Below are positions 23,681 through 40,338 of a stretch of 64,000 nt of DNA, piece after piece (position 1 is the first letter of the stretch; every line of letters begins with the position of its first letter). The stretch is from the sequence record PV740454.1; one strand, given 5' to 3'. The notes under the pieces were generated by a model. That model worked only from the letters and a program-made list of their open reading frames with translations, was not told where the DNA came from and made no database searches. A program made the position numbers and the translations under genes.

Positions 23681-24205
23681 CTATTTTCTTCGACTTGCTT
23701 TATTTGCTTTTCGCTTCGCTCTTCTAAGCTCTTTACGTTTAGCAATCTTATCAGCACGTCGAACAGCATCATAATCCGCTGCACAAGACGCTGCAAACGC
23801 ATCTGGCTTGAATACCGGCTCTTGACCCACATAGCCAAGAATCGTACCTTTAGCTTCGTTATACGCGATATGAGAACGATGTGCTGGGTCTGGGTTGATA
23901 TCGACGTGAACTTCGAAGCCTCGCGGACCGCACATCGGTTTAACTCTCAGTGCAGTTTCACCGGCTTTATAAACTTCAGTCATCAAACGACTTCGAATAC
24001 CATCTTTACTAGACATATAAGCTGGTTCAGTTTCGACAGATTTGAAAACTTGAGCACCTTTACTACCTTCAAGATGTATGATTATCACAGTAGCGTAACT
24101 GATCATGTCACTTTTACGCTTGCTATCACACCCGACGTATATAGTACTATTCGGATGACTGTTGTTGATAGCTGTTTCTATTGCTTCCCAATCGAACATT
24201 TTCAC
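23681..24205 (-). CDS. RNase H-like YkuK/DUF458 family protein
   Basis: IYVGCDS, RL-x2-EV, EVHVDIN, KPDAFAASCAAD acidic-residue motifs. Confidence 0.85.
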   Translation of the reverse strand: MKMFDWEAIETAINNSHPNSTIYVGCDSKRKSDMISYATVIIIHLEGSKGAQVFKSVETEPAYMSSKDGIRSRLMTEVYKAGETALRVKPMCGPRGFEVHVDINPDPAHRSHIAYNEAKGTILGYVGQEPVFKPDAFAASCAADYDAVRRADKIAKRKELRRAKRKANKASRRK

Positions 24206-24218
24206 CTCTATTCAAAAC

Positions 24219-24244
24219 AAAAAAGGGCAGCATAATGCCACCCT
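24219..24244 (-). terminator. Probable terminator after the TROVE-like gene
   Basis: AGGGTGGC-ATTAT-GCTGCCCT + T tract. Confidence 0.6.
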
Positions 24245-24251
24245 TAGTCAA

Positions 24252-25691
24252 TTAAAAACTGTATCGGTCAACGCCGACAGTTTTCAGCATGATCTTGACT
24301 GGCTCAAGTTCACCACCTAACAGTGAAGTTAGAATTGATGGGCTACAACCCGAAACCAGTGCAGTACCTGCTTCACCTGATTTAACAGGAACGTTGTCTA
24401 GACGACCACGAATGTTCCAGAAAACTAGCTGAGGCATATCATAACCAGCACGTGCGTACTTAGCTTTGATTGCATCGAAGTTAGCAACTTCTGCTCGACC
24501 ATACCAACCACCACCGCGATTTGCTTGGTCGAATTCCATGTCACTCATGATAAGCAACTTGGTTGGCATATCTTCTTGTGAAAGATTTGCACGACTAGCA
24601 CGTTCTAAAAGAACGTCGAAACATTTCCCGATGTTAGTGCTCATGTCTTCGCCTGAGCGATTCATGTTCGAAAGACGCTCTTTCAGCGTGTTACCGCTCA
24701 ACTTGTGGAAGTGCGGATTACTTGAGAACGAAATGAATTGATCTTTGAAGATACCTTCATTGCGCTCAGCAACGTAAATGCCGAGAGACATTGCTACTTG
24801 CTTACAAGTAACTGCGTTAGCAGCGTGTACACCGTTGATCGGTGTGCTCATAGATCCAGACACGTCTACAACAGGGATGATACGCTCATCAGAGCCTTCC
24901 ATGTAGTTCGGTAGAGCTTTCCATTGCTCGTTCGCTACAGATGCGTTACCGCGTTCAACGCTTTTAACAACATCGTATGGGAACAATGCACCAGCGTTGA
25001 TCTTCGCTTCACCTTTTTGTAGTGATTCGATGTAGTTTGTGTAACGAGTTTCAGCGTTACGACCGAATGCTTTTTGATAACGAGCAGACGCTACAGAAGG
25101 CAACTTACCGAAGTCGATTGCATCCCAATCTTTCGCACACATCTTTTGTTCAACAGTGTCAGACAAAAGAGCAAGAATCTTACGCCACTGCTTAGCAGTT
25201 ACACCAAGAGATTTGATCGTGCGCTTGAACACGTGACCGTTCTTGCTGTTTTCACGAGGGAACCACTTAGCAGCAAGCCCGTTTTTGTCATTGACAATCG
25301 CATTTGACCACATAGTGATCGCGTCTTTTTCGAGTTTAGTACCGAAAGCAACGATTAAGTCATCGAAACGACCTAATTCTGGTACTTTTGACATTACAGC
25401 GCGTGCCACTTCTGGCTGTTCATTACAAAGTTTAGCGAACAGAGTACGGAAAGTACCACGTTCACCTGCGCCACCTCGAACGTCACGAGACCATAGCAAG
25501 ATGCGTGTCGCCAGTTCTGGGTTTTCTGCAAACGCACGACCGAACAGTGTTTTAGACTGATCGTTGCCACGCATAGCAGCAATACCGAAGAACAAGTTTA
25601 GACACTCGTTACCTGAAGTGCTGTGCGTAACTGCACCGTTTGCTGTACGTGAATCGTTTGATTGCATAGCGTTCATAAATAGACTTGTCAT
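24252..25691 (-). CDS. TROVE/Ro60-like RNA-binding protein (DUF2828-type helical domain + vWA)
   Basis: RD-x-RGG-x-GER, GRFDDL, LAAKWFPRE; vWA MIDAS VVDVSGSM...T...SDMEFD; start re-assigned to ATG 25691 (GGAG + 9 nt). Confidence 0.8.
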   Translation of the reverse strand: MTSLFMNAMQSNDSRTANGAVTHSTSGNECLNLFFGIAAMRGNDQSKTLFGRAFAENPELATRILLWSRDVRGGAGERGTFRTLFAKLCNEQPEVARAVMSKVPELGRFDDLIVAFGTKLEKDAITMWSNAIVNDKNGLAAKWFPRENSKNGHVFKRTIKSLGVTAKQWRKILALLSDTVEQKMCAKDWDAIDFGKLPSVASARYQKAFGRNAETRYTNYIESLQKGEAKINAGALFPYDVVKSVERGNASVANEQWKALPNYMEGSDERIIPVVDVSGSMSTPINGVHAANAVTCKQVAMSLGIYVAERNEGIFKDQFISFSSNPHFHKLSGNTLKERLSNMNRSGEDMSTNIGKCFDVLLERASRANLSQEDMPTKLLIMSDMEFDQANRGGGWYGRAEVANFDAIKAKYARAGYDMPQLVFWNIRGRLDNVPVKSGEAGTALVSGCSPSILTSLLGGELEPVKIMLKTVGVDRYSF

Positions 25692-25724
25692 TGCTGTAAG
25701 CTCCATTATCAAGGATCAAAAATT

Positions 25725-26318
25725 ATGTTTCATATTGTATATCAAATCACAAATATAATAAACAATAAAATTTATGTCGGTAAACACTCAACTGAGAATA
25801 TACACGACGATTATATGGGTTCTGGTAAATTATTACTCAGAGCCATTTCAAAGTATGGCAAAGAAAATTTCACAAAAGAGATATTATTCGTATCTCACGA
25901 TGAGAATGAAGCATATCATAAAGAATCTGAAATTGTCAATGAAAATTTTGTGTTGCGCGAAGACACATACAATTTAAAAATTGGAGGTCTAGGTGGCTCA
26001 TCAGGTATAGAATCGCCATGCAAAGGTCGCGCTTTGAGTGAAGATACTAAACGAAAAATGAGAAAGAGTAAACACTTTTCTCAAAAACATTTAGATTTTC
26101 TTTCAGAAAAGCTATCAGCGTACAACAAATCTAGAAAGGGTAAATCTAGAACTGATCTTAACGGCTCATCTAACCCTATGCATAAAGGTACATGGGTAAC
26201 GCCAAAAGGTAAATTTGAGACATCAGAACTAGCTGCAACGGTAAATCAATGCAGCCAGTCTACTGTTGTAAGACGATGCAATAACCCAAATTTCACAGAT
26301 TGGTTCATCGAAAATTAG
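25725..26318 (+). mobile_element. Free-standing GIY-YIG homing endonuclease (Seg-like) with NUMOD3-like repeat
   Basis: IVYQITNIINNKIYVGKH...YMGSG...AISKYGKENFTKEIL; antisense to all neighbours. Confidence 0.9.
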
Positions 26319-26619
26319 CACGAATCATCGTTGCTGTATTTTCAAATACCTCAACAACGATGTAACCAGATGTTTCATACTGAGTTCGAACATTACGATA
26401 CCCGTGTGCGTCTAGCAATGATCTTACAATCGAAGCACCGCGCTTGTCTTTGTCAGATGCATGAATCGGCACAGATATTGTGAACGGGAATGTGATATCT
26501 TCTTTCAACGCTTCAGTGAATGACAATTCACATGCGTCGCGATAGTGCTTATTCAACACAATATTGAGATCACGTTCACGTTCGTTTATTTTCTGACTTA
26601 ACTGATCGTGTGTAATCAT
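26305..26619 (-). CDS. Hypothetical protein
   Basis: 104 aa; resembles the next ORF. Confidence 0.7.
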   Translation of the reverse strand: MITHDQLSQKINERERDLNIVLNKHYRDACELSFTEALKEDITFPFTISVPIHASDKDKRGASIVRSLLDAHGYRNVRTQYETSGYIVVEVFENTATMIRANFR

Positions 26620-26948
26620 TGTTCAACTCTCTTGTGATTCTTATTGATGGTGATCTGAACATACGAATAAGACACGTCTCGAACGTCTCTCACATCACCG
26701 TTGTACTTACCGAATTGAGCTTTGAAATTTTCAAACCCTTCTCGACGCAACACGTCTTGAACAAGAGTCATCATTTCATCACAGCATTCGTTGTATTGCA
26801 ATCGAACTTGAATAGTTACAGGGAATGAAAACCCACCAACACTACTGATTCTACGTTCAATCGCAGCTCGAACATCAGTTATGAACTTATCTTCTCGCGC
26901 TCGTCGATTGCTATCTACTTTCTGAATTAATGCGTCATACAAATTCAT
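26616..26948 (-). CDS. Hypothetical protein
   Basis: 110 aa; overlapping start/stop. Confidence 0.7.
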   Translation of the reverse strand: MNLYDALIQKVDSNRRAREDKFITDVRAAIERRISSVGGFSFPVTIQVRLQYNECCDEMMTLVQDVLRREGFENFKAQFGKYNGDVRDVRDVSYSYVQITINKNHKRVEQ

Positions 26949-27316
26949 AGATAATCCTTAATTGTCCCCGTGAAGTGACGAATACATGAGCTGTCAAGAC
27001 GTTTTCGACCATCACCTTCTACATCTGGCAGCGTATATTCATCGTTAAATGGTTGACCGCTTTCTTTTGCGATCTCGTAAGCATCAGCTCGATTGAAGTA
27101 CTCACCACAATAGTTGATGAATCCCTGCCCACGATCACCTAGTTCACTTCGATGTTCAATTGTGCAACCAAGCTCTTTGATTAGCTTGAACACGCTTTGC
27201 ATGTTTCTACCGAAATGACAGCTATCGGCGACTACGACTTCACGTTGTTCACCGTTTGGTAATGTAACGCGAATTGCGTTTGCAGCAGCAGAGATCACAT
27301 TGACGTGTTCTGACAT
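26945..27316 (-). CDS. Conserved phage hypothetical protein
   Basis: I-x-AAA...H...QGF-x4-GE-x2-NR-x2-A-x-EIA-x3-GQ pattern. Confidence 0.7.
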   Translation of the reverse strand: MSEHVNVISAAANAIRVTLPNGEQREVVVADSCHFGRNMQSVFKLIKELGCTIEHRSELGDRGQGFINYCGEYFNRADAYEIAKESGQPFNDEYTLPDVEGDGRKRLDSSCIRHFTGTIKDYL

Positions 27317-27654
27317 GAATCATACCTCATAAAAATAGAACCAACACGCTTGTATTGATCAGTGTTCATTAATAGACGTGCCATTTTAGTGTGAGCAACT
27401 GGATTACTTGTCACTAGAATTACAGTCTTCGGATAATTGCCATGATCAATTGCATGAGATAAAATGTGATATCCCTCATGACCTAGTGCATCGCCTAAGT
27501 CATTGTCCATGAATAATGTGATATCAGTTAGATTCGTGTGCTTGATGAATTTCATGCCTTCTTTATATGTGCGAAGAACTAGCTTTTCATCTTCACGAAC
27601 TGTATCTGCGGTTAACTTATTAATGTCACGCAGATCATCGATCAATACATACAT
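27295..27654 (-). CDS. Cyclic-phosphate-processing receiver (REC)-like domain protein
   Basis: LIDDLR...RTY-x-EG...LFMDNDLG...EGY-x-IL...TSNPV; start re-assigned to ATG 27654. Confidence 0.7.
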   Translation of the reverse strand: MYVLIDDLRDINKLTADTVREDEKLVLRTYKEGMKFIKHTNLTDITLFMDNDLGDALGHEGYHILSHAIDHGNYPKTVILVTSNPVAHTKMARLLMNTDQYKRVGSIFMRYDSCQNTSM

Positions 27655-27715
27655 AATATTTCTCTTGCTTATTGAATAAATACTATCATACAGTTCAAAC
27701 AAAGAGAAGTCAACA

Positions 27716-28087
27716 ATGAATGATGAAAAAATCGTATCTTTTGAAGAATACCTAAATGAGGGATGGTTTGAAAGACAATGGTCGCGTTATAAAGCAGGAG
27801 CCGACTCTAGAAGCATCAAGAAGCTCGCTAAGATGCATACAAAGCTTCTGCATATAGAACAGAAGGCAAAGCAAAACAAATACCGCTACGACGTTGTGCG
27901 CTACAATTACGAGCATATTAAAATGAATGTGCTTGACGCAAAGCGACTTATCAACAAACTTCGATACAAGAAAGGAATTAGTCAAGAGCTAGTTCAAGCA
28001 ATGGATAAACTAGATCTTGAATTGGATAGATTGAATGACTTTGCAGTCGAGGGATTGCATATGCTCATGATTAATCACAAGCTATAA
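27716..28087 (+). CDS. Hypothetical protein with capsid-targeting-like N-terminus
   Basis: IVSFEEYLNE; AATAAATA at 27675; own terminator at 28089-28112. Confidence 0.7.
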   Translation: MNDEKIVSFEEYLNEGWFERQWSRYKAGADSRSIKKLAKMHTKLLHIEQKAKQNKYRYDVVRYNYEHIKMNVLDAKRLINKLRYKKGISQELVQAMDKLDLELDRLNDFAVEGLHMLMINHKL

Positions 28088-28088
28088 G

Positions 28089-28112
28089 AAAGCCCCATAT
28101 TGGGGCTTTTTT
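28089..28112 (+). terminator. Intrinsic terminator
   Basis: AAAGCCCCA-TAT-TGGGGCTTTTTT. Confidence 0.85.
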
Positions 28113-28116
28113 GTTT

Positions 28117-28329
28117 TCAGTGTGAGTGGCGTAACTTTTTCTCGATCATACGATCTACAATCGTGGAGTACAGTAAATGTTCTTTGTAATATTTCTCATC
28201 AACTCGGTTGCATTGGAATTGTCGAAAATCTTTGCGCAGACGTGCAATAAATTTATTAAGTGCTTTGCGTACTTTGCAAACTTCAGATAGTTCCATGCTC
28301 TTTAGTGTTTCTTCAGAAAGTATTTCCAT
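28117..28329 (-). CDS. Hypothetical protein
   Basis: 70 aa; GAGGTG RBS. Confidence 0.7.
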   Translation of the reverse strand: MEILSEETLKSMELSEVCKVRKALNKFIARLRKDFRQFQCNRVDEKYYKEHLLYSTIVDRMIEKKLRHSH

Positions 28330-28357
28330 GATTGTTCACCTCTTAGTTAATAGAATA

Positions 28358-28403
28358 CGGGAGACACGGGAATCGAACCCATTGCCTTGACCACATATCT
28401 CCC
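28358..28403 (-). ncRNA. tRNA minihelix-like element (acceptor stem + T arm only)
   Basis: GGGAGAT/GTCTCCC stem; ATGGG-TTCGATT-CCCGT T arm; 14 nt replace the D and anticodon arms. Confidence 0.6.
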
Positions 28404-28425
28404 ACTGAGAAGTTACGCCAATCTG

Positions 28426-28650
28426 TTAATGTGCTAATCTCATCAAACGGCGCATACGTTCTCTTTCTGATAGCTCATCTAGATTTTCTGTTTTCACCTC
28501 TTTGACTTCTTCTGACTGCTCATCGTCTGATGCTTTTTTCTTAGCATCTGGGCCGATGTTGTCCCATAATGAGCTGTTACGCCAGTTTTCGTTATATCCG
28601 TTACCCAACCCGCGACCTTCGCGTGCGTGTGATTTTCTGTATTGACTCAT
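28426..28650 (-). CDS. Hypothetical protein
   Basis: 74 aa charged ORF. Confidence 0.65.
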   Translation of the reverse strand: MSQYRKSHAREGRGLGNGYNENWRNSSLWDNIGPDAKKKASDDEQSEEVKEVKTENLDELSERERMRRLMRLAH

Positions 28651-28847
28651 TCGTCTGAATTCTTTGTTACTTGTTTTACCGCACCAGCTACAGCAACAGC
28701 ACCTGCCACTTTAGCACCCGTTTTAGCTTTTTTAGCTACAGACTTTGCTTTTGATTTCACCTTGTCACGCAGCTTACGTTTTTTGTTATCGACTGGCTTC
28801 TTGTCTTCAATTTCCGACATGAATACGTCGAATGTTTTATCACTCAT
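28647..28847 (-). CDS. Small basic protein with capsid-targeting-like N-terminus
   Basis: MSDKTFDVFMSE; GGAG RBS; ACTAAATA at 28880-28887. Confidence 0.65.
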   Translation of the reverse strand: MSDKTFDVFMSEIEDKKPVDNKKRKLRDKVKSKAKSVAKKAKTGAKVAGAVAVAGAVKQVTKNSDE

Positions 28848-28921
28848 GGCAATTCTCCATCTGTGTTTGAGTATAACTGTATTTAGTATCAAAATAACTT
28901 AAATTGCAAACTCCATAAACA

Positions 28922-28946
28922 AAAAAACCCGCTCAATGGCGGGTTC
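28922..28946 (-). terminator. Terminator ending the tRNA island transcript
   Basis: AACCCGCC-ATT-GAGCGGGTT + T tract. Confidence 0.8.
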
Positions 28947-28961
28947 TAATGTGCAATCAAC

Positions 28962-29235
28962 AGACATTCGAGAAGTGTTTTTTCGTCTTTCCTTAAATCT
29001 CATTTGACTAGCTTGTTTCTTATACAAGCAAGCATTTACGTATTCAGCGCAACGCCCATTCCGTTTAACGATACGAAAATCGTCGAAGTCATTTCCTACT
29101 TCACGAGAACACAGTTCCCTTAGCTGTCAGGCTTACGTCATCACTGAGAATGCAGCTAGTACGCCCCGGTCGTCACCTTGAAGATGACTATTCCAATTTT
29201 AGCTTCTTTGATTAGAATATTGCTGTACAATGTCT
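28962..29235 (-). ncRNA. Long structured RNA 1 (274 nt), Y-RNA-like closing stem + TACAGCAA
   Basis: AGACATT/AATGTCT closing helix; paralog of 33372-33581. Confidence 0.7.
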
Positions 29236-29246
29236 TATTGCGAATT

Positions 29247-29335
29247 TGGCGGAGATACTGGGAGTCGAACCCAGAGAACGCTATTAACGTCCGACACCTT
29301 AGCAGGGTGCTGTCATACCTTTAGACCATATCTCC
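29247..29335 (-). tRNA. trnS: tRNA-Ser(GCT)
   Basis: Cloverleaf, loop CTGCTAA, long variable arm, CCA. Confidence 0.95.
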
Positions 29336-29337
29336 AG

Positions 29338-29517: not shown

Positions 29518-29569
29518 GTCTAATCCCTCAGTTAGTTTATAATATTTATAACTGAGCAACTTTTAATCA

Positions 29570-32321: not shown

Positions 32322-32395
32322 TGGAGCGGGTACACGGACTCGAACCGACTCTACTTCTGTGTAAGAGAAGCGTACTCCCATTATACTAAGGGACT
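32322..32395 (-). pseudogene. Chimeric tRNA: Val 5' portion fused to Gly 3' end; acceptor stem unpaired
   Basis: 5' part near-identical to 32088-32161; 3' GTGTACCCGCTCCA identical to tRNA-Gly 32763-32837. Confidence 0.85.
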
Positions 32396-33371: not shown

Positions 33372-33581
33372 AGACAATACCGAAGTGTTTTTTCGTCTTT
33401 GACATGAATCGGAGTTGACTATCTTATTGGTTCTCAACAAGCAAATATCGTCTGTTTCAGCGACGCGCCTATCTGACTATTTCTAGACAGAGAGAATCTT
33501 TCCTTTCAAGCTGCACCGAAGCACTGCCCAGGTTAAGATCATCACCTTTTTAAGTAAGTAATTTGTTGCTGTATATTGTCT
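33372..33581 (-). ncRNA. Long structured RNA 2 (210 nt), Y-RNA-like closing stem + TACAGCAA
   Basis: AGACAATA/TATTGTCT closing helix; 19-nt identity with RNA 1. Confidence 0.7.
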
Positions 33582-34468: not shown

Positions 34469-34585
34469 ACTGAGTGTCATTACTTGCGCCATCCGAGACT
34501 AGAGATACCAACTCTAAACGGGATTCGAACCCGAAACATTTCTTTTATCGGAAGAATTTGTAATTGTTTGCTGAAAACACTCAAT
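34469..34585 (-). ncRNA. Y-RNA-like tRNA mimic (117 nt)
   Basis: 10-bp closing helix ATTGAGTGTT/GACACTCAGT; TTCAGCAA; anticodon-like hairpin TTCTT-CCGATAA-AAGAA; T arm CGGG-TTCGAAT-CCCG; no D arm or CCA. Confidence 0.75.
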
Positions 34586-34591
34586 GGTATT

Positions 34592-34665
34592 TGGCTGGGA
34601 TATAGAGATTCGAACTCTAACTGACGGAATCAAAATCCGTAGTGCTACCATTACACCATATCCCA
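34592..34665 (-). tRNA. trnQ: tRNA-Gln(TTG)
   Basis: Loop TTTTGAT, GCCA. Confidence 0.95.
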
Positions 34666-34672
34666 ATTGTTC

Positions 34673-34921
34673 TTATCGCTGAAAATAGCCGTGACTCATT
34701 TTGATCTTATCGGCAAATTCGCGAAGCATACGGTCTGCAAGTTCAAACGATAACTCTTTATCAGCGTCACCTTGTTGCTGCAAATCGTGTGCAATTTTAC
34801 TTCGAAGCTCTTCTGGCTTGTACCCGAACACTTGTTTACCCCAGTGTTCTTTAACTCTATGGTACGATTCCATCGAAATGCTATCTCGTCTAGCTTCTTG
34901 AAATTCTGAAAATGTTTTCAT
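34673..34921 (-). CDS. Internal-head-protein-like small protein
   Basis: MKTFSEFQE; TATAAATA at 34945-34952. Confidence 0.75.
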   Translation of the reverse strand: MKTFSEFQEARRDSISMESYHRVKEHWGKQVFGYKPEELRSKIAHDLQQQGDADKELSFELADRMLREFADKIKMSHGYFQR

Positions 34922-34961
34922 GATTATTACCTTTCGTAAAATCATATTTATAAATTATCTT

Positions 34962-35037
34962 TGGCGGAACCGACGGGGCTCGAACCCGCTTCCTTTCCCG
35001 TGACAGGGGAATATGCACCCAGTTACACCTCGGCTCC
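34962..35037 (-). tRNA. trnD: tRNA-Asp(GTC)
   Basis: Loop CTGTCAC, GCCA. Confidence 0.95.
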
Positions 35038-35256
35038 CCAAAGACAACTTACGTTGCTTTGTGCTCGTGCAAACCAAACACTAGCTAAACGACTTCTTGA
35101 TTTCTTAGTTGTACTATACATTCCCTGCTAAGGGCATCATCGTTCTTGTTTTTAACAAATGTCATGAAAGTGAGATCTTGTTATGCAAGAGGTTTCAAAT
35201 CCCTGCATACAAGCAGACATAACAACCAATGCTCTCATACATTGTCATGGTCAAAC

Positions 35257-35332
35257 TGGCGCTCCATGTTGGACTCGAACCAACGACTCTCTGATTAACA
35301 GTCAGACACTCTACCGACTGAGTTAATGAAGC
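35257..35332 (-). tRNA. trnN: tRNA-Asn(GTT)
   Basis: Loop CTGTTAA, GCCA. Confidence 0.95.
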
Positions 35333-35338
35333 ATAATA

Positions 35339-35413
35339 TGGCGACGAAGGAGAATTTCGAAATCTCGACCTGTCGGTTAACAGCCGACTGCTCTGCCTCT
35401 GAGCTACTCCGTC
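35339..35413 (-). tRNA. trnN: tRNA-Asn(GTT), second divergent copy
   Basis: Loop CTGTTAA, GCCA. Confidence 0.9.
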
Positions 35414-35425
35414 ATTAAATTAAAC

Positions 35426-35484
35426 AGTAATCATTCTTTGCTTTTTCAAAATAAAAGTTTAGTATTGTTTGCTGCAAGATTACT
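35426..35484 (-). ncRNA. Minimal Y-RNA-like element (59 nt)
   Basis: AGTAATC/GATTACT closing helix, TGCAGCAA, hairpin CTTTT/AAAAG, AAAGAAT before the 3' strand. Confidence 0.65.
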
Positions 35485-35489
35485 TAAAC

Positions 35490-35563
35490 TGGCAGGGACA
35501 TAGAGATTCGAACTCTAACGAACGGGTTTGGAATCCGTCATGCTGCCGTTACATCATGTCCCT
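35490..35563 (-). tRNA. trnW: tRNA-Trp(CCA)
   Basis: Loop TTCCAAA, GCCA. Confidence 0.93.
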
Positions 35564-35569
35564 AAAATT

Positions 35570-35643
35570 TGGTAGCCCCAGACAGACTCGAACTGTCAAC
35601 GTGCGATTATCGGTCGCGTGTTTTACCGTTAAACTATGGAGCT
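35570..35643 (-). tRNA. trnI: tRNA-Ile(GAT)
   Basis: Loop CCGATAA (C33), ACCA. Confidence 0.92.
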
Positions 35644-35705
35644 AAAGTGAGCACCGAAGTGCTCTTGTTAATCGGTTAAGTGACTAAACTCCCCGGTTAA
35701 CAAAT

Positions 35706-35802
35706 TGGCGGAAGACTAGGGATTCGAACCCTAACAAGCATTTCTGCTCCGACGGTTTTCAAGACCGTTGCCGCTACCCCGAATCTTTCGGCTAAGCCTT
35801 CC
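35706..35802 (-). tRNA. trnS: tRNA-Ser(TGA) with enlarged D loop
   Basis: Loop CTTGAAA, long variable arm, about 17-nt D loop. Confidence 0.88.
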
Positions 35803-35808
35803 TTAATT

Positions 35809-35885
35809 TGGATGCGTGAGGTTGGATTCGAACCAACGACCTTCGGCTTATGAGACCGATGAGCTGACCACTGCTCTACTCCGCA
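35809..35885 (-). tRNA. trnfM: Initiator-like tRNA-Met(CAT), atypical
   Basis: fMet-like D arm (GAGCAGTGGTCAGCTC) and CTCATAA loop; bulged acceptor, U73. Confidence 0.8.
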
Positions 35886-35895
35886 TTTATTCAAC

Positions 35896-35981
35896 AGCTT
35901 GCGTTCTTTGGTCTGTTTATCTCTGTCTGAACTAAGTTCGTCTAGTGATCAATAGATTAAGTAATTTGCAGTATGCAAGCT
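35896..35981 (-). ncRNA. Y-RNA-like element (86 nt)
   Basis: AGCTTGC/GCAAGCT closing helix, TACTGCAA, AAAGAAC before the 3' strand. Confidence 0.65.
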
Positions 35982-35986
35982 AAATC

Positions 35987-36073
35987 TGGTGGTTCGCCTA
36001 GGACTCGAACCTAGAAGCCCGATTAAGGGCGAGGGATTTACAATCCCCTGACTTACCATTAGTCTAACGAACC
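35987..36073 (-). tRNA. trnY: tRNA-Tyr(GTA)
   Basis: Loop TTGTAAA, long variable arm. Confidence 0.95.
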
Positions 36074-36079
36074 AGAATT

Positions 36080-36154
36080 TGGTTCACCCGACGAGATTCG
36101 AACTCGCGCATACTTCCTTGAAAGGGAAGTGACCTACCGTTAGTCTACGGGTGA
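36080..36154 (-). tRNA. trnE: tRNA-Glu(TTC)
   Basis: Loop CTTTCAA, ACCA. Confidence 0.92.
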
Positions 36155-36218
36155 ATTATATTGTATATTGATTTGCAAGCTAATCAACTTGCAAAGCGAT
36201 ACACAATGTATCTGAATT

Positions 36219-36292
36219 TGGTGGGTCCACAGAGATTCGAACTCTGACTGAAGGATTAAAAGTCCCATATGCTACCATTACATCATAGACCC
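36219..36292 (-). tRNA. trnK: tRNA-Lys(TTT)
   Basis: Loop CTTTTAA, ACCA. Confidence 0.93.
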
Positions 36293-36380
36293 AATTTGAT
36301 TTTCACGTTAAGAGCGTTTGCAAAATAACCCAAAACTAAAATCTCTTGCTTGATTTAACTCTTACAAACAAGCTATAATT

Positions 36381-36456
36381 TGGTGCACCCTACGGCTATC
36401 GAGACCGTGACCTGCGGGACTTCAATCCGCCGCTCTACCAACTGAGCTAAGGGTGC
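36381..36456 (-). tRNA. trnF: tRNA-Phe(GAA)
   Basis: Loop TTGAAGT, ACCA; T loop CTCGATA. Confidence 0.9.
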
Positions 36457-36508
36457 AATGTGCGAAGATTTATGTTTTAAGTCAGCTATCGCAAACAGAC
36501 TACATGTT

Positions 36509-36586
36509 TGGTACGCATGAAGAGATTCGAACTCTTAACTTCTGGTTTCTAAGACCAGTGCCTCTGCCAGATTGGGCTACATGCGC
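36509..36586 (-). tRNA. trnL: tRNA-Leu(TAG), short variable loop
   Basis: Loop CTTAGAA, 5-nt variable loop. Confidence 0.9.
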
Positions 36587-36611
36587 ATTAAATTGTAAAC
36601 TTCTTTTCTTC

Positions 36612-36660
36612 ATTATACATGATGTTTTTATCTTTGTAAACATCTTTTTTAATTTATTTT
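36612..36660 (-). promoter_or_regulatory. Strong sigma70/T4-early-type promoter driving the tRNA array
   Basis: GTTTACA-N17-TATAAT with TG and an A-rich UP element. Confidence 0.8.
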
Positions 36661-36791
36661 GAAGAACTTCGTTTTCTATGTGTTAATATTAACACTCACT
36701 CAAGACATCTTAAACACTAATTTGTGAAAAAGTTCGTTAAATTCTATCGTCTCGACAGTACTTAACGAGATACGGTCCTAAGCGTATCAAA

Positions 36792-36867
36792 TGGCACCCA
36801 ATACAAGATTCGAACTCGTAACCTTCGCCTTCGTAGGGCGCTGCTCTTCCAATTGAGCTAATCGGGC
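36792..36867 (-). tRNA. trnR: tRNA-Arg(ACG)
   Basis: Loop CTACGAA, GCCA. Confidence 0.95.
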
Positions 36868-36874
36868 ATTAAAT

Positions 36875-36951
36875 TGGTCCGCGACAAGCGATTCGAACGC
36901 TTAACTTCTCCGCCCCAAACGGAGTACTCTACCAGATTGAGCTAGTCGCGG
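36875..36951 (-). tRNA. trnP: tRNA-Pro(TGG)
   Basis: Loop TTTGGGG, ACCA. Confidence 0.95.
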
Positions 36952-37265
36952 TTTGTTCTTTAACTTTGTTTATGATACTCTGTAATCAAAATACGATAAA
37001 CAAAATTTTCAAATTATTTTCATTTTCTTCAGATAATAAAAAAGGACGCTATTTGCGTCCTCAAGTATACTTCTATGTTATACTATCGGACTACAAGAGG
37101 GAATCCCAGTTTTGTTTCGCACACGGATTCGCAAGATACACGAATTCTGAGCGCAGAAAATCGCTGCGTAAAATCTCAGTTGAATGTGTAATCGAATGTG
37201 TCATTGAATGCTCTCTTGCAAAAATTAAAATTGTTTTTCTTCTTTATTTTATTTATATTCGTGTT

Positions 37266-37493
37266 TCAATCGTATAGACAAATTTTACCATGTTTTTCAA
37301 AATATTTTAAAATTTCTTCATATTCAACGTCAGAAAGTGTGCGAAATTCACGAAATCCGTCACCAGTAGAAGCGTCGTAAGGAAGTCTTGTGTATTTTTT
37401 ATGCAAGTACGATTCATGCATACGAGCATCATTAACAGTTATAGACAATAAATTGTGTATATCAGTCCCACGTTTTCTCGCACATTCATACAC
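37266..37493 (-). CDS. Hypothetical protein
   Basis: 75 aa ORF. Confidence 0.55.
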   Translation of the reverse strand: MYECARKRGTDIHNLLSITVNDARMHESYLHKKYTRLPYDASTGDGFREFRTLSDVEYEEILKYFEKHGKICLYD

Positions 37494-37526
37494 TCTCTGT
37501 TTGACACGATAACTATTGCAAATTAA

Positions 37527-37760
37527 TTAACCTAGATGCTTACGCTTATTCATTTCAACTAGAATTTCATCGTTGTAATGCTTGTTAAGCTGTACAAACT
37601 TCTTGTGTTGATCTTCTGTCAACTCATTCGTGTCATTTAGGTGCTTCAAGAACCCAAGAGGCTTACGAAACGACTTACGATACTCGTTTAGACGTTCATC
37701 TGTTAGATTATGCAACTGTTTCGGAGTAAGCAGTACTTTATTAATATCAAAATTACTCAT
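37527..37760 (-). CDS. Hypothetical protein
   Basis: 77 aa; GAGG RBS. Confidence 0.7.
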   Translation of the reverse strand: MSNFDINKVLLTPKQLHNLTDERLNEYRKSFRKPLGFLKHLNDTNELTEDQHKKFVQLNKHYNDEILVEMNKRKHLG

Positions 37761-37785
37761 GTGTAACCTCTCTTTGTTTGTAAAA

Positions 37786-37901
37786 TGGTAGTCGGGGCTG
37801 GATTCGAACCAGCGACCACGTGCTTAACAGGCAATTGAAAGAGTGCTGGAGCGATACTTGACAGTATCATTCTTCGTGCTCTACCACTGAGCTACCCGAC
37901 T
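37786..37901 (-). ncRNA. tRNA-like RNA with about 40-nt insertion in the anticodon arm
   Basis: Normal acceptor, D and T arms + ACCA; insert AAGAAT-[GATACT-GTCA-AGTATC]-GC-TCCAGCAC...TGC-CTGTTAA-GCA. Confidence 0.8.
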
Positions 37902-37906
37902 GTAAA

Positions 37907-38200
37907 TTATTTAATGTTAAAGTCACCGCGTTCAAACGCTGCTAAAAATTCAGCAGTCGAATCAAATGCAATGTATTCTTTACCAGTATGTTCTTTTGTT
38001 CTTACTCTAACCTTACCACCACGAACTGCTACTTCGAACTGCCCAGATTTAACATGAGCGTCTTTTCGAATCGAACCTGACATCATTTTCTCAAGCTTTT
38101 TCGCAAAGTTTACGTCGTTGACAGTCGTAGGGTTCTGTGGCATCAGAGTATCCCAACGAGAATCGCGCATTTCGGTAACAAACTCATCAAAAGTTTTCAT
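37907..38200 (-). CDS. Internal-head-protein-like small protein
   Basis: MKTFDEFVTE; CATAAATA at 38223-38230. Confidence 0.8.
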   Translation of the reverse strand: MKTFDEFVTEMRDSRWDTLMPQNPTTVNDVNFAKKLEKMMSGSIRKDAHVKSGQFEVAVRGGKVRVRTKEHTGKEYIAFDSTAEFLAAFERGDFNIK

Positions 38201-38225
38201 TGTACTCTCCTTTTAAAGAAAGTAT

Positions 38226-38753
38226 TTATGTTCGAAGTTTGAACTTCAGATTTCGCCATTCAAAGTTACGTTTGTTCTTTTCTTTGTAGAACGAATCCCA
38301 GTCAATTGAAATAGGACAATTCTTACTTCCAACACGTGCAATGAACACATCGTGAGTCTTGCTGTATCGCGTTCTAAGCTCGTTTACGCGCTTATCGTAG
38401 TTAGCGATATAATCAGAGCAAGCTTTGTTGTACGCTGCTTTAGAGAAGCGTTCGTTGCTTGCAAACACGTGACCTAGATATGGGCGAATTACACGAACAC
38501 GTTCTCGCGACCATCCCATATCGAAACTGTTCTCGATCTCACCGGTAATCCTTCCCGTCTTTTTACAACGAGCTAGAATAACCCAACAACGCTCACGTCG
38601 AAAATCTTTTCGCGTGTACACGTTAACATGTTCTTCAACATATTCAGCGTGTTTGTTGTTGTAAATCGCTCGAAGACGCTTTCTCTCTTCAGGATCCATT
38701 GCAGCACGTTCTTCTTTAGAGAACGCTTGAGCAAATGTCATTGGCACATTCAT
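38226..38753 (-). CDS. Basic hypothetical protein
   Basis: 175 aa ORF. Confidence 0.7.
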   Translation of the reverse strand: MNVPMTFAQAFSKEERAAMDPEERKRLRAIYNNKHAEYVEEHVNVYTRKDFRRERCWVILARCKKTGRITGEIENSFDMGWSRERVRVIRPYLGHVFASNERFSKAAYNKACSDYIANYDKRVNELRTRYSKTHDVFIARVGSKNCPISIDWDSFYKEKNKRNFEWRNLKFKLRT

Positions 38754-38959
38754 AACATACCTCGCTTACGCTTCAACTGACTTCGCTCAATCTGAGTAGT
38801 AATTTGCTTGTCTTTAGCTTTACTGCGACGAGAGTTACCCCATCGAAACCCAGCACACAGCCCATGTTGATCACGCTTTAACTTTTTTGCAAGCCAATGC
38901 GGAATTTCTTCACCTTTGCGCTGATAGTGTTTAGCAGTATCAGTGTAAGTTTTACCCAT
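38750..38959 (-). CDS. Small basic hypothetical protein
   Basis: 69 aa; GGAG RBS. Confidence 0.65.
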   Translation of the reverse strand: MGKTYTDTAKHYQRKGEEIPHWLAKKLKRDQHGLCAGFRWGNSRRSKAKDKQITTQIERSQLKRKRGML

Positions 38960-38970
38960 AATATTCTCCG

Positions 38971-39208
38971 TGGCGGGTGAGAGAATCGAACTCTCTACTG
39001 GCGCAACACATCGTCAACCCGATAAGAGTTTCGAAGTAAGAGCCTATCAGCATATCAAATTCATTGTCTTTATTTCAACACACAACAGTTCGACCTATCG
39101 ATGTGTTTTTTCTCAACAAGCCCGAGTGATTCAGCACCACCACAGATAGCGAATCTGCAACTGTACTAATGTTCGGTATACACTGCACACAGAGCACCAA
39201 GCCCCGCC
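38971..39208 (-). ncRNA. Large tRNA-like RNA (238 nt): acceptor + T arm enclosing an insert of about 200 nt
   Basis: GGCGGG/CCCGCC stem; GAGAG-TTCGATT-CTCTC T arm; insert shares GCTGAA, GCTTGTTGAGAA and GAAAAAACAC with long RNAs 1 and 2. Confidence 0.7.
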
Positions 39209-39219
39209 ATAATAAATTG

Positions 39220-39297
39220 TGGTGACCCCAACAGGACTCGAACCTGTAACCTACCGATTATGAGTCGGTTGCTCTAACCGAGTTGAGCTATAGGGCC
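39220..39297 (-). tRNA. trnI: tRNA-CAT, probably Ile2 (lysidine type)
   Basis: GGCCC start and GGTTAGAGCAACCGACTCATAATCGG resemble enterobacterial ileX. Confidence 0.85.
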
Positions 39298-39300
39298 ATA

Positions 39301-39669
39301 TTAATTCTCAAGAAATCGACCAATCTTCGCTGCAAAAATGTTCTCTTCTTCTGCAATCAGAGCAACAGATTTTACCTGATGAAATACATCTTGATCATGT
39401 AAGTTATCTAGTTTGCCTGCACATTTTGTCAGTTCTTTGATTGTACGTCTAATCTCTATACCGTCATGCTGACTTACTTCAGGATGCGTGTTGAGATTAT
39501 CCATAACGGGAATTATTTTACCATAACATCCCATTCCGATGAAGTTTATCACAAGTCTATACTGCATTTCAACAGCAAATGAGCAATATTTTCTAAGATT
39601 GCGCTTTACAATCTCACAACGATGCAAGATGCAATCTAGCTCGTCGTTAATGTCATCAAACTTATTCAT
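39301..39669 (-). CDS. Hypothetical protein
   Basis: 122 aa; GAGG RBS. Confidence 0.7.
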   Translation of the reverse strand: MNKFDDINDELDCILHRCEIVKRNLRKYCSFAVEMQYRLVINFIGMGCYGKIIPVMDNLNTHPEVSQHDGIEIRRTIKELTKCAGKLDNLHDQDVFHQVKSVALIAEEENIFAAKIGRFLEN

Positions 39670-39682
39670 AAAACCTCGAAAG

Positions 39683-39803
39683 TGGTGGAGAGTACGGGAT
39701 TTGAACCACGTGACAAAAAGATTTACCTAGTTAAGGTTGCAGCATGAATGCTTGTCAGAATTCTTTAACATTCTTTCGCTCTACCAGACTGAGCTAACTC
39801 TCC
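39683..39803 (-). ncRNA. tRNA-like RNA with about 45-nt anticodon-arm insertion
   Basis: GGAGAGT/ACTCTCC-ACCA; normal D arm; AAAGA/TCTTT stem around an insert containing TGCTGCAA. Confidence 0.75.
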
Positions 39804-39817
39804 GTTGTAAAAACATA

Positions 39818-39941
39818 TTGATGCGGGTGCAGGAGTCGAACCTGCGTCACGATCTTATGAATGATATGCGAATTGATTGCCGTACAGATTCTTATCAGAA
39901 TCAGTTTTTGCTACGTGTGCTAACCACTACACCAACCCGCA
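39818..39941 (-). ncRNA. tRNA-like RNA with anticodon-arm insertion (paralog of 40192-40338)
   Basis: TGCGGGT/ACCCGCA; hairpin GATTCT-GATA-AGAATC then TACGGCAA; T arm GCAGG/CCTGC. Confidence 0.78.
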
Positions 39942-40191
39942 TCAATATGTTTTCGGGAGTGCTTGCATAGACATTTCTCTACACAAGCACAAAATCCTAT
40001 TATATGCCTTATCTAATCATAACACAATCTGGAATCGTGCGCTTTAAGTACGGGATTGATGACCCGTTCGCATATGATTAGCGTAAAAGTATGATTACGC
40101 ACCTTTTCTTCTTCAATGTCCAAGGCAAATAGGACGATGAATACTAGTGCGAGAAGATATACAATCAAATTGTTCACCTCGCTTTGTTAGT

Positions 40192-40338
40192 GAGAGTACA
40201 TTGGTCGAGTGTAACAGAATCGAACTGTTCCCACGATCTCCCTATGATATGCGTAAATTGGTTGCTGAATATAATCATGTCTGATTACAGTATGCTACGT
40301 GTGCTGCCACTACACCAACACTCGACCAATGTACTCTC
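40192..40338 (-). ncRNA. tRNA-like RNA with anticodon-arm insertion and 21-bp extended acceptor helix
   Basis: GAGAGTACATTGGTCGAGTGT perfect inverted repeat; hairpin TGTAATC/GATTATA then TTCAGCAA. Confidence 0.78.

What the first reader, a model, noticed from the sequence alone, without database searches (positions are those of the whole stretch)
23681..40338. Candidate new system: a phage TROVE/Ro60-like protein with about nine motif-sharing Y-RNA-like tRNA mimics
Seen: a TROVE-like vWA gene (24252-25691) lies downstream of the RNA island on the same strand. Nine non-canonical RNAs carry a TNCDGCAA motif directly 3' of a helix: TACAGCAA (28962-29235, 33372-33581), TTCAGCAA (34469-34585, 40192-40338), TGCAGCAA (35426-35484), TACTGCAA (35896-35981), TACGGCAA (39818-39941), TGCTGCAA (39683-39803), TCCAGCAC (37786-37901). 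Several also have AAGAAT/AAGAAC/AAGTAAT just 5' of the partner strand. Beyond this module they carry different cargo: anticodon-like hairpins, T arms, whole tRNA bodies or 200-nt domains. Known: bacterial Ro60 binds Y RNAs, some of which mimic tRNA, and is linked to RNA repair and decay genes. Inference: one protein docks many RNA adaptors or decoys, for example baits for host anticodon nucleases or tethers for repair/decay enzymes. The number and diversity of RNAs and the divergent DUF2828-type protein are the unusual parts.
Basis: partly seen in the sequence, partly recalled or inferred. Interest (0 to 1): 0.92.

Follow-up and report, generated by a model that had tools for sequence, protein, structure and literature searches.

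The report
Phage Ro60-like protein with partner RNAs
This KVP40-like Vibrio phage carries a Ro60-shaped protein gene (DUF2828 family) and at least nine small RNAs sharing one docking module (7-bp helix plus xUx-CAGCAA), a gene-RNA pairing that recurs next to each other in very distant phages and closely resembles the orphan 'Class I' RNAs of Dictyostelium, pointing to a widespread, undescribed ribonucleoprotein.

Summary
All nine RNAs exist on the minus strand, sit in tRNA-like slots of a 26-tRNA island, and are conserved in KVP40-like phages with compensatory changes in the helix. The motif is better stated as a 7-bp helix + N-U-N + C-N-G-C-A-A, with an A-rich tract on the other side. Five RNAs close the helix with their own ends (start AG, end CUGU). 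Four carry it as a G-N-N-A hairpin inside a tRNA body.

The 486-aa protein (DUF2828+DUF7788) models as a Ro60 fold: the top PDB matches are Ro60 structures, and the MIDAS residues are invariant.

The key result is linkage. In 80 environmental DUF2828 loci a strict scanner finds 84 modules on the gene strand and 2 on the other, half of them within 500 nt of the gene. Modules also abut the gene in Felixounavirus, Aeromonas, Mycobacterium, Listeria, Campylobacter and Staphylococcus phages.

Cargo is often tRNA parts, such as anticodon-stem-loop mimics, T arms and permuted tRNA bodies.

The RNAs share the start, stem, motif, length and end of Dictyostelium Class I RNAs but score below Rfam's threshold.

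Protein-RNA binding and function are inferred, not shown.

The parts
24252..25712 (-). DUF2828+DUF7788 protein (486 aa from a TTG start; ATG alternatives at 25706 and 25691). It is predicted to be a Ro60-like helical-repeat domain plus a vWA domain with an intact MIDAS motif.
   Evidence: Pfam hits. PHROG 850 'RNA-binding protein'. AF2 model with pLDDT 78.7. Foldseek top hits are Ro60 structures. D283/S285/S287/T359/D391 are invariant in 41 homologues.
35426..35484 (-). E5, a minimal 59-nt module RNA. Layout: AGUAAUC-UUG-CAGCAA, then an anticodon-stem-loop mimic (CUUUU-AUUUUGA-AAAAG), an A-rich tract, GAUUACU, then GU.
   Evidence: CM R1 gives 45.5 bits, E = 5e-9. Rfam Dicty_Class_I_RNA gives 27 bits over the full model. 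It lies 5 nt and 12 nt from the flanking tRNAs.
35896..35981 (-). E6, an 86-nt module RNA: AGCUUGC-AUA-CUGCAA ... AAAGAAC-GCAAGCU, then GU.
   Evidence: It lies 5 nt after tRNA-Tyr and 10 nt before tRNA-Met.
34469..34585 (-). E3, a module RNA with a 9-bp terminal stem (7-bp core UGAGUGU/ACACUCA, then GU) and UUU-CAGCAA. Its cargo is a T-arm-like hairpin plus an anticodon-like hairpin with loop UUGGUAU.
   Evidence: The stem of the cargo hairpin covaries among five phages.
33372..33581 (-). E2, a 210-nt module RNA: AGACAAU-AUA-CAGCAA ... AUUGUCU, then GU. Its cargo is a ~190-nt domain.
28962..29235 (-). E1, a 274-nt module RNA, paralogue of E2: AGACAUU-GUA-CAGCAA ... AAUGUCU, then GU.
   Evidence: It lies 11 nt downstream of tRNA-Ser.
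40192..40338 (-). E4, a tRNA-like body with a 20-21-bp extended acceptor stem. The module hairpin GUAAUCA-GACA-UGAUUAU + AUU-CAGCAA (about 40262-40288) replaces a normal anticodon arm.
   Evidence: (z = -6.65).
39818..39941 (-). E7, a tRNA-like paralogue of E4. Module hairpin UGAUUCU-GAUA-AGAAUCU + GUA-CGGCAA (about 39877-39903).
   Evidence: Its KVP40 homologue is annotated as a pseudo-tRNA.
39683..39803 (-). E8, a tRNA body ending in CCA. Module hairpin GAAUUCU-GACA-AGCAUUC + AUG-CUGCAA (about 39737-39763) sits within an expanded anticodon arm.
   Evidence: Rfam tRNA 50.2 bits with a large insert..
37786..37901 (-). E9, a tRNA-Asn(GUU)-like body ending in CCA. A 41-nt insert in the 5' strand of the anticodon stem carries the hairpin UGAUACU-GUCA-AGUAUCG + CUC-CAGCAC (about 37843-37869). 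This is the weakest motif match.
   Evidence: Rfam tRNA 49.8 bits.. An equivalent element exists in Aeromonas phage PX29.
29247..39297 (-). The tRNA island (26 ARAGORN tRNAs) in which the module RNAs occupy tRNA-like slots.
23681..24205 (-). PF04308 (YkuK/RNase H-like) gene directly downstream of the DUF2828 gene. This neighbour is kept in KVP40-like phages only.
   Evidence: It is not a conserved neighbour in 79 other loci.
27295..27702 (-). cREC_REC (cyclic-phosphate-processing receiver) domain protein, 1.6 kb upstream of the DUF2828 gene. This is RNA-repair context.
   Evidence: Family description in PMC7824862.

Best explanation
The DUF2828/DUF7788 protein is a divergent Ro60-type protein: a helical-repeat domain plus a vWA domain with a MIDAS site. 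The nine RNAs are its Y-RNA equivalents.

Each RNA carries one docking module. It consists of a 7-bp helix, which is either the paired RNA ends or a GNNA-capped hairpin. The single-stranded N-U-N-CAGCAA follows on one side, and an A-rich tract lies on the other side.

The RNAs are transcribed with the phage tRNAs and released by the tRNA-processing machinery.

The protein binds the module. The variable remainder of each RNA is displayed as cargo: an anticodon-stem-loop mimic, a T arm, a permuted or whole tRNA body, or a ~200-nt domain.

The most likely job of these particles is in the phage-host conflict over tRNAs. They would present tRNA look-alikes that soak up or recruit tRNA-acting enzymes. 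These enzymes could be host anticodon nucleases (decoy role) or repair and turnover enzymes (tether role, as Y RNA tethers PNPase to Ro60).

Shown here:
- the RNA family and its structure;
- the Ro60-like predicted fold;
- the tight, strand-specific gene-RNA linkage across distant phages;
- the tRNA-like cargo.

Inferred:
- direct binding (about 0.75);
- processing from tRNA transcripts;
- the tRNA-conflict role (about 0.4), with decoy versus tether unresolved.
For: Fold:
- The Foldseek top four PDB hits are all Ro60, with E from 2e-7 to 1.5e-5 over the full length.
- The MIDAS motif DxSxS..T..D is invariant.

RNA family:
- Helix pairs covary among orthologues while CNGCAA stays fixed.
- There are 210 unique elements with 102 different stems.
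- In a pattern search that left four stem positions free, 39 of 118 matches pair at all four, against 2% expected.
- Positions the scanner did not constrain are conserved: U 91%, A 88%.

Linkage:
- 84 versus 2 modules by strand in 80 DUF2828 loci, with 49 loci positive.
- Half the modules lie within 500 nt of the gene, and DUF2828 is the only conserved protein neighbour.
- 11 of 52 loci found through the RNA pattern hold DUF2828 in the few kb available, always on the same strand. None of the 64 chance-pattern loci does.
- Modules abut the gene in wV8, PX29, Gabriela, AG20, F356 and Staphylococcus Ph6.

Cargo:
- Anticodon-stem-loop mimics occur in 26 of 95 short RNAs, against 1.3 in shuffles. 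UUU and UUG are the commonest anticodon-like triplets.
- YrlA-like permuted tRNA domains occur in wV8 and Gabriela.

Slots: the RNAs lie 3-12 nt from neighbouring tRNAs, like tRNA-tRNA spacers.

Precedent: Ro60 genes lie next to their Y RNAs in more than 250 bacteria and 22 phages (PMC4201824). Phage phiLo Ro60 binds two adjacent Y-like RNAs and host PNPase (PMC12135203).
Against: - No binding, expression or end-mapping data exist for these RNAs.
- Sequence searches do not connect DUF2828 to TROVE. The model is of medium confidence (pLDDT 78.7, TM about 0.5).
- The module differs from the known Ro60 site (GNCGAA / GGUCCGA), and Rfam YrlA is not matched (28 bits against 69).
- 41 of 52 RNA-first loci show no DUF2828 in the short stretch held, and 33 of 80 gene loci have no strict module. 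Several of those have variants or cut flanks. One-to-one co-occurrence per genome is therefore untested.
- In this window the gene is 3.2-14.6 kb from the RNAs, not adjacent.
- In Dictyostelium the look-alike RNAs bind an RRM protein (Rnp1A), so another reader of the motif is possible.
- The most abundant ncRNAs near the Listeria phage homologue lack the module.
Confidence: 0.6

Rival explanations
1. The particle is the same, but its job is different. As with bacterial Ro60-Y RNA-PNPase (RYPER) and phage phiLo Ro60, the RNAs would tether the protein to a host exonuclease. They would redirect or damp general RNA decay or rRNA/tRNA quality control, not counter anticodon nucleases.
For: This is the only experimentally supported role of Ro60-Y RNA particles in bacteria and phages (PMC4201824; PMC12135203). 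The fold match to Ro60 and the long non-tRNA cargos E1 and E2 fit it.
Against: The cargo is strongly biased towards tRNA parts, including canonical CU-NNN-AA anticodon loops. The RNAs sit in tRNA islands. No PNPase-binding feature was identified.
Confidence: 0.25
2. The module is a cis-acting processing or stability element of phage tRNA operons. It would be an acceptor-stem mimic read by RNase P, a 3' trimming enzyme or another host factor, unrelated to DUF2828. On this view the gene and RNAs lie together only because both live in the accessory 'tRNA region'.
For: The helix is 7 bp like an acceptor stem, and the elements occupy tRNA slots. 34 of 52 RNA-first loci contain tRNAs, and 41 of 52 show no DUF2828 in the stretch held.
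Against: 15 of 79 DUF2828 loci have modules but no tRNA within 10 kb, and only 4 have tRNAs without modules. Gabriela has modules abutting the gene with no tRNA annotated within 5 kb, and in Staphylococcus Ph6 the only tRNA nearby is 2 kb from the modules. DUF2828 is the only conserved protein neighbour. The T4 tRNA cluster has no module.
Confidence: 0.1
3. The elements are decayed or intron-bearing tRNA genes, as KVP40's annotation ('tRNA-Pseudo-3/4/5') implies. The shared motif would be a relic of common descent or a small mobile insert.
For: E8 and E9 pass the Rfam tRNA threshold with 40-50-nt inserts. KVP40 RefSeq calls the homologues pseudo-tRNAs. PX29 annotators called two of them intron-containing tRNAs.
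Against: The insert's helix covaries and its motif is fixed across phages sharing only 46-53% protein identity. Most family members have no tRNA body at all. No splicing signal or group I intron was found.
Confidence: 0.04

Closest known systems
Ro60 (Rsr/TROVE)-Y RNA ribonucleoproteins, including bacterial YrlA and phage examples (mycobacteriophages; Thermus phage phiLo Ro60 with Yrl1/Yrl2)
   Same: - The predicted protein architecture matches: a helical-repeat domain plus a vWA/MIDAS domain.
- The ncRNA genes lie beside the protein gene on the same strand, often several per locus.
- The RNA design matches: a stem formed by the 5' and 3' ends, a conserved motif just after the 5' strand, and a variable effector part.
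- At least one RNA per phage carries a tRNA-like domain, permuted as in YrlA (T arm, closed acceptor hairpin, D arm) in wV8 and Gabriela.
   Different: - The protein family differs (Pfam DUF2828/DUF7788, not TROVE), with no significant sequence match.
- The RNA signature differs: xUx-CAGCAA after a plain 7-bp helix, not GNCGAA/GGUCCGA in a bulged helix. Rfam YrlA is not matched.
- There are many more RNAs per genome (nine here). Some use a closed-hairpin version inserted into complete tRNA bodies, and some are minimal ~58-nt RNAs whose only cargo is an anticodon-stem-loop mimic.
- The distribution among phages is far wider: 711 of 50,697 phage records.
Dictyostelid Class I RNAs (Rfam RF01414; Aspegren 2004, Avesson 2011, Kjellin 2021)
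   Same: - Genomic start AAG.
- A short terminal stem made of the two ends, with free covariation.
- An unpaired conserved motif directly after the 5' strand (CCUUACAGCAA, against xUUACAGCAA in phages).
- A variable A/U-rich interior.
- A length mode of about 60 nt.
- The end CUGU.

Sources: PMC7919456, compared. The Rfam model aligns end to end with E5.
   Different: - Scores are 27-32 bits, below the gathering score of 41.5.
- The spacer is one nucleotide shorter in phages.
- The phage RNAs lie in tRNA operons rather than behind DUSE promoters.
- The known Dictyostelium partner is an RRM protein (Rnp1A).
- Class I RNAs were reported as unique to Dictyostelia.
- I could not establish whether Dictyostelium has a DUF2828 protein.
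T4 stable RNAs C and D (species 1 and 2) and other non-tRNA RNAs of phage tRNA clusters
   Same: They are small stable RNAs of unknown function encoded inside a T4-type tRNA cluster and processed with the tRNAs. rnaC has a T-arm-like hairpin.
   Different: T4 rnaC and rnaD lack the helix + CAGCAA module, and the T4 tRNA region has no module at all.

Membership tests
Ro60/TROVE-Y RNA system | Protein with a TROVE helical-repeat domain followed by a vWA domain with a MIDAS site | tested here: met
   Met at the level of predicted fold only. AF2 pLDDT is 78.7. The Foldseek top hits are 9l5y, 1yvr and 2i91 (all Ro60), full length, TM 0.43-0.57. MIDAS residues are invariant.
Ro60/TROVE-Y RNA system | Sequence membership in Pfam TROVE (PF05731), or a significant sequence match to a solved Ro60 | tested here: not met
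   Pfam reports only DUF2828 and DUF7788. phmmer against PDB finds no Ro60. A profile against PDB hits the phiLo TROVE protein at E = 0.74.
Ro60/TROVE-Y RNA system | Partner ncRNA genes encoded next to the protein gene on the same strand | tested here: met
   Strand bias is 84:2, and 40 of 80 modules lie within 500 nt of the gene. Six named phage groups show the same arrangement. In this window the distance is 3.2-14.6 kb.
Ro60/TROVE-Y RNA system | Y RNA signature: terminal stem with the conserved Ro-binding motif (GNCGAA / GGUCCGA); match to Rfam YrlA | tested here: not met
   The architecture is analogous, but the motif is CAGCAA. The best YrlA hit is 28.2 bits against a gathering score of 69, and it falls on tRNA parts.
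Ro60/TROVE-Y RNA system | Direct, motif-dependent binding of the RNA by the protein | not testable with these tools
   Needs EMSA, RIP/CLIP or a structure.
Dictyostelid Class I RNA (RF01414) | Short stem joining the 5' and 3' ends, conserved in structure but not in sequence | tested here: met
   102 distinct stems. Orthologous covariation. 39 of 118 matches pair at the unconstrained positions, against 2% expected.
Dictyostelid Class I RNA (RF01414) | 11-nt motif CCUUACAGCAA adjacent to the 5' strand; conserved start AAG and end CUGU; length about 60 nt | tested here: inconclusive
   UUACAGCAA is the commonest phage form. The base before AG is A in 65%. After CUG, U follows in 59%. The length mode is 50-69 nt. 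However, the spacer is one nucleotide shorter than in Dictyostelium.
Dictyostelid Class I RNA (RF01414) | Score at or above Rfam's gathering threshold (41.5 bits) | tested here: not met
   27.0 and 15.3 bits in the window, and 32.0 bits in L171.
tRNA / pseudo-tRNA | Cloverleaf with a 7-nt anticodon loop on a 5-bp stem | tested here: inconclusive
   E8 and E9 reach the Rfam tRNA threshold only by skipping a 40-50-nt insert, and ARAGORN does not call them. E9 keeps a CUGUUAA loop. E4 and E7 have no anticodon arm. The type B RNAs are not tRNAs.

The most novel reading that the evidence does not exclude
The phage RNAs and the Dictyostelium Class I RNAs would be one RNA family, and DUF2828 proteins would be its conserved reader. 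DUF2828 proteins also occur in land plants, Mortierella-type fungi, Naegleria and mites. That would make this a second, Ro60-like ribonucleoprotein lineage shared, probably by horizontal transfer, between phages and eukaryotes. It would give the 20-year-old orphan Class I RNAs a candidate partner and mechanism. One candidate is the uncharacterised pull-down protein DDB_G0281243.
Probability: 0.25. Interest if true: 0.95.

Novelty: new variant of a known kind. Interest (0 to 1): 0.88.

Why it matters
DUF2828 proteins are among the commoner unexplained phage proteins. They occur in 711 of about 50,700 phage genomes and in more than 7,800 metagenomic proteins. Databases label them only 'RNA-binding protein'.

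This work gives them a concrete, testable RNA partner family with hundreds of members and a simple recognition module.

It explains the long-standing 'pseudo-tRNAs' and unannotated gaps in the tRNA islands of KVP40-, Felix O1-, A511/P100- and cluster-L-type phages.

It suggests that phages deploy protein-held tRNA look-alikes alongside their tRNA genes. That bears on the current question of how phages survive tRNA-cleaving defences.

The resemblance to Dictyostelium Class I RNAs, previously thought unique to social amoebae, offers a new entry point to their unknown mechanism and to the plant DUF2828 proteins.

Tried and rejected
- Rfam at gathering and permissive thresholds found no described family for the nine RNAs. 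There were only tRNA hits, a spurious YrlA hit, and the sub-threshold Class I hit.
- Sequence searches of the protein against PDB gave no Ro60.
- The first literature searches on 'TROVE' and 'von Willebrand' were swamped by unrelated papers.
- I tried to learn whether Dictyostelium has a DUF2828 protein, or whether DDB_G0281243 is one:
  - Length-gated homologue searches returned plants and fungi only.
  - A representative search from a fungal homologue, with cluster look-ups, gave Naegleria, Willaertia, mites and a chrysophyte.
  - The Avesson 2011 paper is not held.
  - The Kjellin 2021 supplements do not mention it.
- No modules lie next to the eukaryotic DUF2828 genes of Podila or Naegleria.
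- The ~200-nt cargo of E1 and E2 has no detectable relatives outside KVP40-like phages.
- The idea that CAGCAA pairs with an upstream GUAGC in E4/E7 rests on invariant columns only and has no counterpart in type B RNAs.
- The very abundant ncRNA region of Listeria phage CKA15, proposed by its authors as Y RNA, has no module.
- Two extra strict hits in the window (44620-44902 on the minus strand, 3643-3736 on the plus strand) lie inside long ORFs and are chance.
- No protein neighbour other than DUF2828 is conserved around the modules. This argues against the adjacent PF04308 protein as the general partner.

Full report
**What the window is**

The protein gene is 100% identical to Vibrio phage CZ01 and 88-96% identical to nt-1, KVP40 and relatives, which are T4-like Straboviridae. 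Everything relevant lies on the minus strand. ARAGORN finds 26 tRNAs between 29247 and 39297. Rfam's tRNA model adds two unusually long hits, 37789-37901 and 39686-39803. The CZ01 record annotates none of them.

**Checking the RNAs**

On the minus strand all nine elements contain the stated octamers. Reading them together gives a sharper definition: a 7-bp helix, three nucleotides (N-U-N), then C-N-G-C-A-A.

- In five RNAs (E1, E2, E3, E5, E6) the helix is formed by the RNA's own ends. Four of them begin AG (E3 begins UG), and all are followed by GU.
- In four RNAs (E4, E7, E8, E9) the same helix is closed by a G-N-N-A tetraloop and sits inside a tRNA-like body, in or beside the anticodon arm.

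Counts in a single window are not decisive, because loose criteria give 2-3 chance hits per strand. Conservation settles it.

- Every element is found by BLAST in KVP40, VH7D, D484 and/or F86.
- The helices change by compensatory substitutions while CNGCAA stays fixed.
- In the E4/E7 alignment six of the seven hairpin pairs show changes on both sides, as do the acceptor and T stems.
- The type B RNAs lie 3-12 nt from neighbouring tRNAs, the same spacing as between tRNAs. They therefore occupy tRNA slots in the operons.

**The protein**

ORF 24252-25712 matches Pfam DUF2828 and DUF7788 and PHROG 850 'RNA-binding protein'. Sequence-only comparisons with solved structures do not find Ro60.

An AlphaFold model built on 41 homologues has pLDDT 78.7 and pTM 0.75. 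Its four best PDB matches are all Ro60: the Thermus phage phiLo Ro60 dimer, Xenopus Ro, and Ro bound to misfolded RNA. These align over the full length, followed by isolated vWA domains. The MIDAS residues (D283, S285, S287, T359, D391) are invariant. So 'Ro60-like' is supported at fold level, not at sequence-family level.

The family is large. It is found in 711 phage records, including Felixounavirus, Aeromonas T4-like, Campylobacter, Listeria, Staphylococcus, Enterococcus, Bacillus and cluster L Mycobacterium phages. There are also more than 7,800 metagenomic homologues. SEA-PHAGES already labels the Mycobacterium phage homologues 'Ro-like RNA binding protein'.

**Linkage of the RNAs to the gene**

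This is the decisive result.

In Felixounavirus wV8 the gene is immediately followed by the tRNA island. Four RNAs there read AGACC..-UUA-CAGCAA ... GGUCU-GG. In Aeromonas phage PX29 both topologies occur, including an E9-like tRNA-Asn body carrying the hairpin.

I then fetched 80 DUF2828 loci from IMG/VR (46-53% protein identity to the query, apart from one that is phage VH7D itself at 91%; 1.29 Mb in total). I scanned them with a strict definition: AG + 5 nt, 3-4 nt, CNGCAA, then within 300 nt the complementary 5 nt followed by CUG.

- 84 hits fell on the gene strand and 2 on the opposite strand. 49 loci were positive.
- Of 80 modules, 34 start within 500 nt after the stop codon and 6 lie within 500 nt upstream.
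- 15 loci have modules but no tRNA within 10 kb. Only 4 have tRNAs without modules.
- No other protein family is a conserved neighbour.
- Several 'negative' loci have variants (UG or GG starts) right after the gene, or have truncated flanks.

For the reverse test, a DNA pattern that leaves four stem positions free returned 116 loci.

- 39 of 118 matches pair at all four free positions, against 2% expected.
- 52 loci hold properly paired modules, often in arrays of up to nine.
- 11 of those 52 contain a DUF2828 gene within the few kb held, always on the same strand and mostly abutting. None of the 64 unpaired (chance) loci does.
- 34 of the 52 contain tRNAs, up to 28.

Finally, four very distant phages each have two or three tandem modules directly beside the gene:

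- Mycobacterium phage Gabriela: stems UGG..CCA, and the middle RNA carries a T arm;
- Listeria phage AG20;
- Campylobacter phage F356;
- Staphylococcus phage Ph6.

The T4 tRNA cluster, including rnaC and rnaD, has no module. Per-genome exclusivity was not tested.

**The RNA family**

Across all loci there are 210 unique elements with 102 different stems and a length mode of 50-69 nt. Positions the scanner did not constrain are conserved:

- spacer position 2 is U in 91%;
- motif position 2 is A in 88%;
- the base before AG is A in 65%;
- U follows CUG in 59%.

A covariance model built from 41 short members finds E5 at 45.5 bits, E = 5e-9. One of those 41 is the KVP40 orthologue of E5. The longer members are missed because of their large inserts.

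Cargo:

- 26 of 95 short RNAs contain a 5-bp stem with a 7-nt loop having U at loop position 2 and a purine at position 6, mostly CU-NNN-AA. Shuffled interiors give 1.3.
- The 'anticodons' vary. UUU and UUG are the most frequent. E5 carries UUU.
- 31 of 72 long elements have a T-loop-like motif.
- wV8 and Gabriela each have an RNA with a T arm, a closed acceptor-like hairpin and a D arm. That is the permuted layout described for YrlA (PMC4201824).

**Comparison with known systems**

*(a) Ro60-Y RNA.* The predicted fold, the adjacency of the RNA genes and the modular RNA plan with tRNA mimicry are the same. The protein sequence family and the RNA signature are different, and Rfam YrlA is not matched. 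Canonical Ro60 with Y RNAs is already known in 22 phages (PMC4201824) and has been characterised for phage phiLo (PMC12135203). Jumbo-phage surveys mention ROT/TROVE proteins (PMC7824862). A 2025 study of Listeria phage CKA15 noted an Rsr-like HHpred match for the homologue and speculated that nearby, extremely abundant ncRNAs are Y RNAs (PMC12282133). That region contains no module, whereas three modules lie unannotated directly upstream of the gene.

*(b) Dictyostelid Class I RNAs.* Rfam RF01414 aligns end to end with E5 at 27 bits and with another phage RNA at 32 bits. Both are below the gathering score of 41.5. The published defining features coincide with the phage consensus apart from a one-nucleotide shorter spacer (PMC7919456). 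These features are:

- genomic start AAG;
- a 6-bp terminal stem with covariation;
- an unpaired CCUUACAGCAA next to the 5' strand;
- length about 60 nt;
- end CUGU.

Class I RNAs were reported as unique to Dictyostelia. DUF2828 proteins exist in plants, Mortierellomycota, Naegleria/Willaertia, mites and a chrysophyte. I could not determine whether Dictyostelium has one, or whether the unnamed DdR-21 pull-down protein DDB_G0281243 is one.

**Mechanism**

The best-supported model is a Ro60-like particle. The protein binds the helix + CAGCAA module, and the RNAs serve as exchangeable adaptors that display tRNA parts.

- The genomic setting is tRNA islands.
- A cyclic-phosphate-processing cREC protein lies 1.6 kb away.
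- Polynucleotide kinase and RNA ligase genes occur in other DUF2828 phages.
- Together with the anticodon-loop cargo, these point to the tRNA cleavage-and-repair conflict with the host.

Whether the particles act as decoys for anticodon nucleases, as tethers for repair or decay enzymes, or as Ro60-style PNPase modulators cannot be decided from sequence.

**Verdict**

The system is a new variant of the Ro60-Y RNA kind. It has a previously undescribed, widespread phage RNA family and an unexpected likeness to Class I RNAs.

Noticed in passing
window 35710-35802 (-): A tRNA-like gene with a long variable arm and anticodon loop CUUGAAA. It scores 40.5 bits on Rfam tRNA-Sec (threshold 47) and is not called by ARAGORN. 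It is probably a 27th, class II tRNA (Ser-UGA-like).
   Followed up: partly
window 25725-26318 (+): A GIY-YIG (SegE-like) homing endonuclease gene sits on the opposite strand directly upstream of the DUF2828 gene. It is present in CZ01 and D484 but absent at this site in KVP40 and F86, so it is a mobile insertion.
   Followed up: partly
window 40192-40338 (-): E4's acceptor stem is extended to a perfect 20-21-bp duplex (fold z-score -6.65). It is conserved with compensatory changes in D484 and F86. This is an unusually long helix for a tRNA-like RNA, and its purpose is unknown.
   Followed up: partly
L208 3419-4080 (Listeria phage AG20; equals CKA15 26,236-26,727): This non-coding region follows a sigma-70-like promoter. 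In phage CKA15 it accounts for up to about 67% of phage transcripts (PMC12282133). It has no CAGCAA module and no Rfam assignment was sought, so it is a separate, very abundant phage ncRNA of unknown kind.
   Followed up: partly
L171 11626-11985 (-): An environmental phage contig carries a full tmRNA (72 bits), with eight module RNAs about 0.6-1.5 kb away on the same strand.
   Followed up: no
protein P0241 (785 aa): A DUF2828+DUF7788 protein fused to a phage integrase domain (PF00589), seen on 12 contigs of up to 193 kb.
   Followed up: no
Kjellin 2021 supplement, file 56: The authors' own search outside Dictyostelia lists an Arabidopsis candidate (ath_can_1: GUUUUC-AUUA-CAGCAA ... GAAAAC-UG, Infernal score 40), which they dismissed. 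Land plants encode DUF2828 proteins.
   Followed up: no
Mycobacterium phage LeBron gp53 (PMC13148394): The cluster L 'Ro-like RNA-binding protein' is moderately toxic when overexpressed alone in M. smegmatis. The same phage's RNA ligase and polynucleotide kinase are toxic too.
   Followed up: no
window 32331-32389 (-): A partial tRNA-like match (27 bits, model positions 7-64), just below threshold, lies inside a region of small ORFs. It could be a further degenerate or tRNA-derived element.
   Followed up: no
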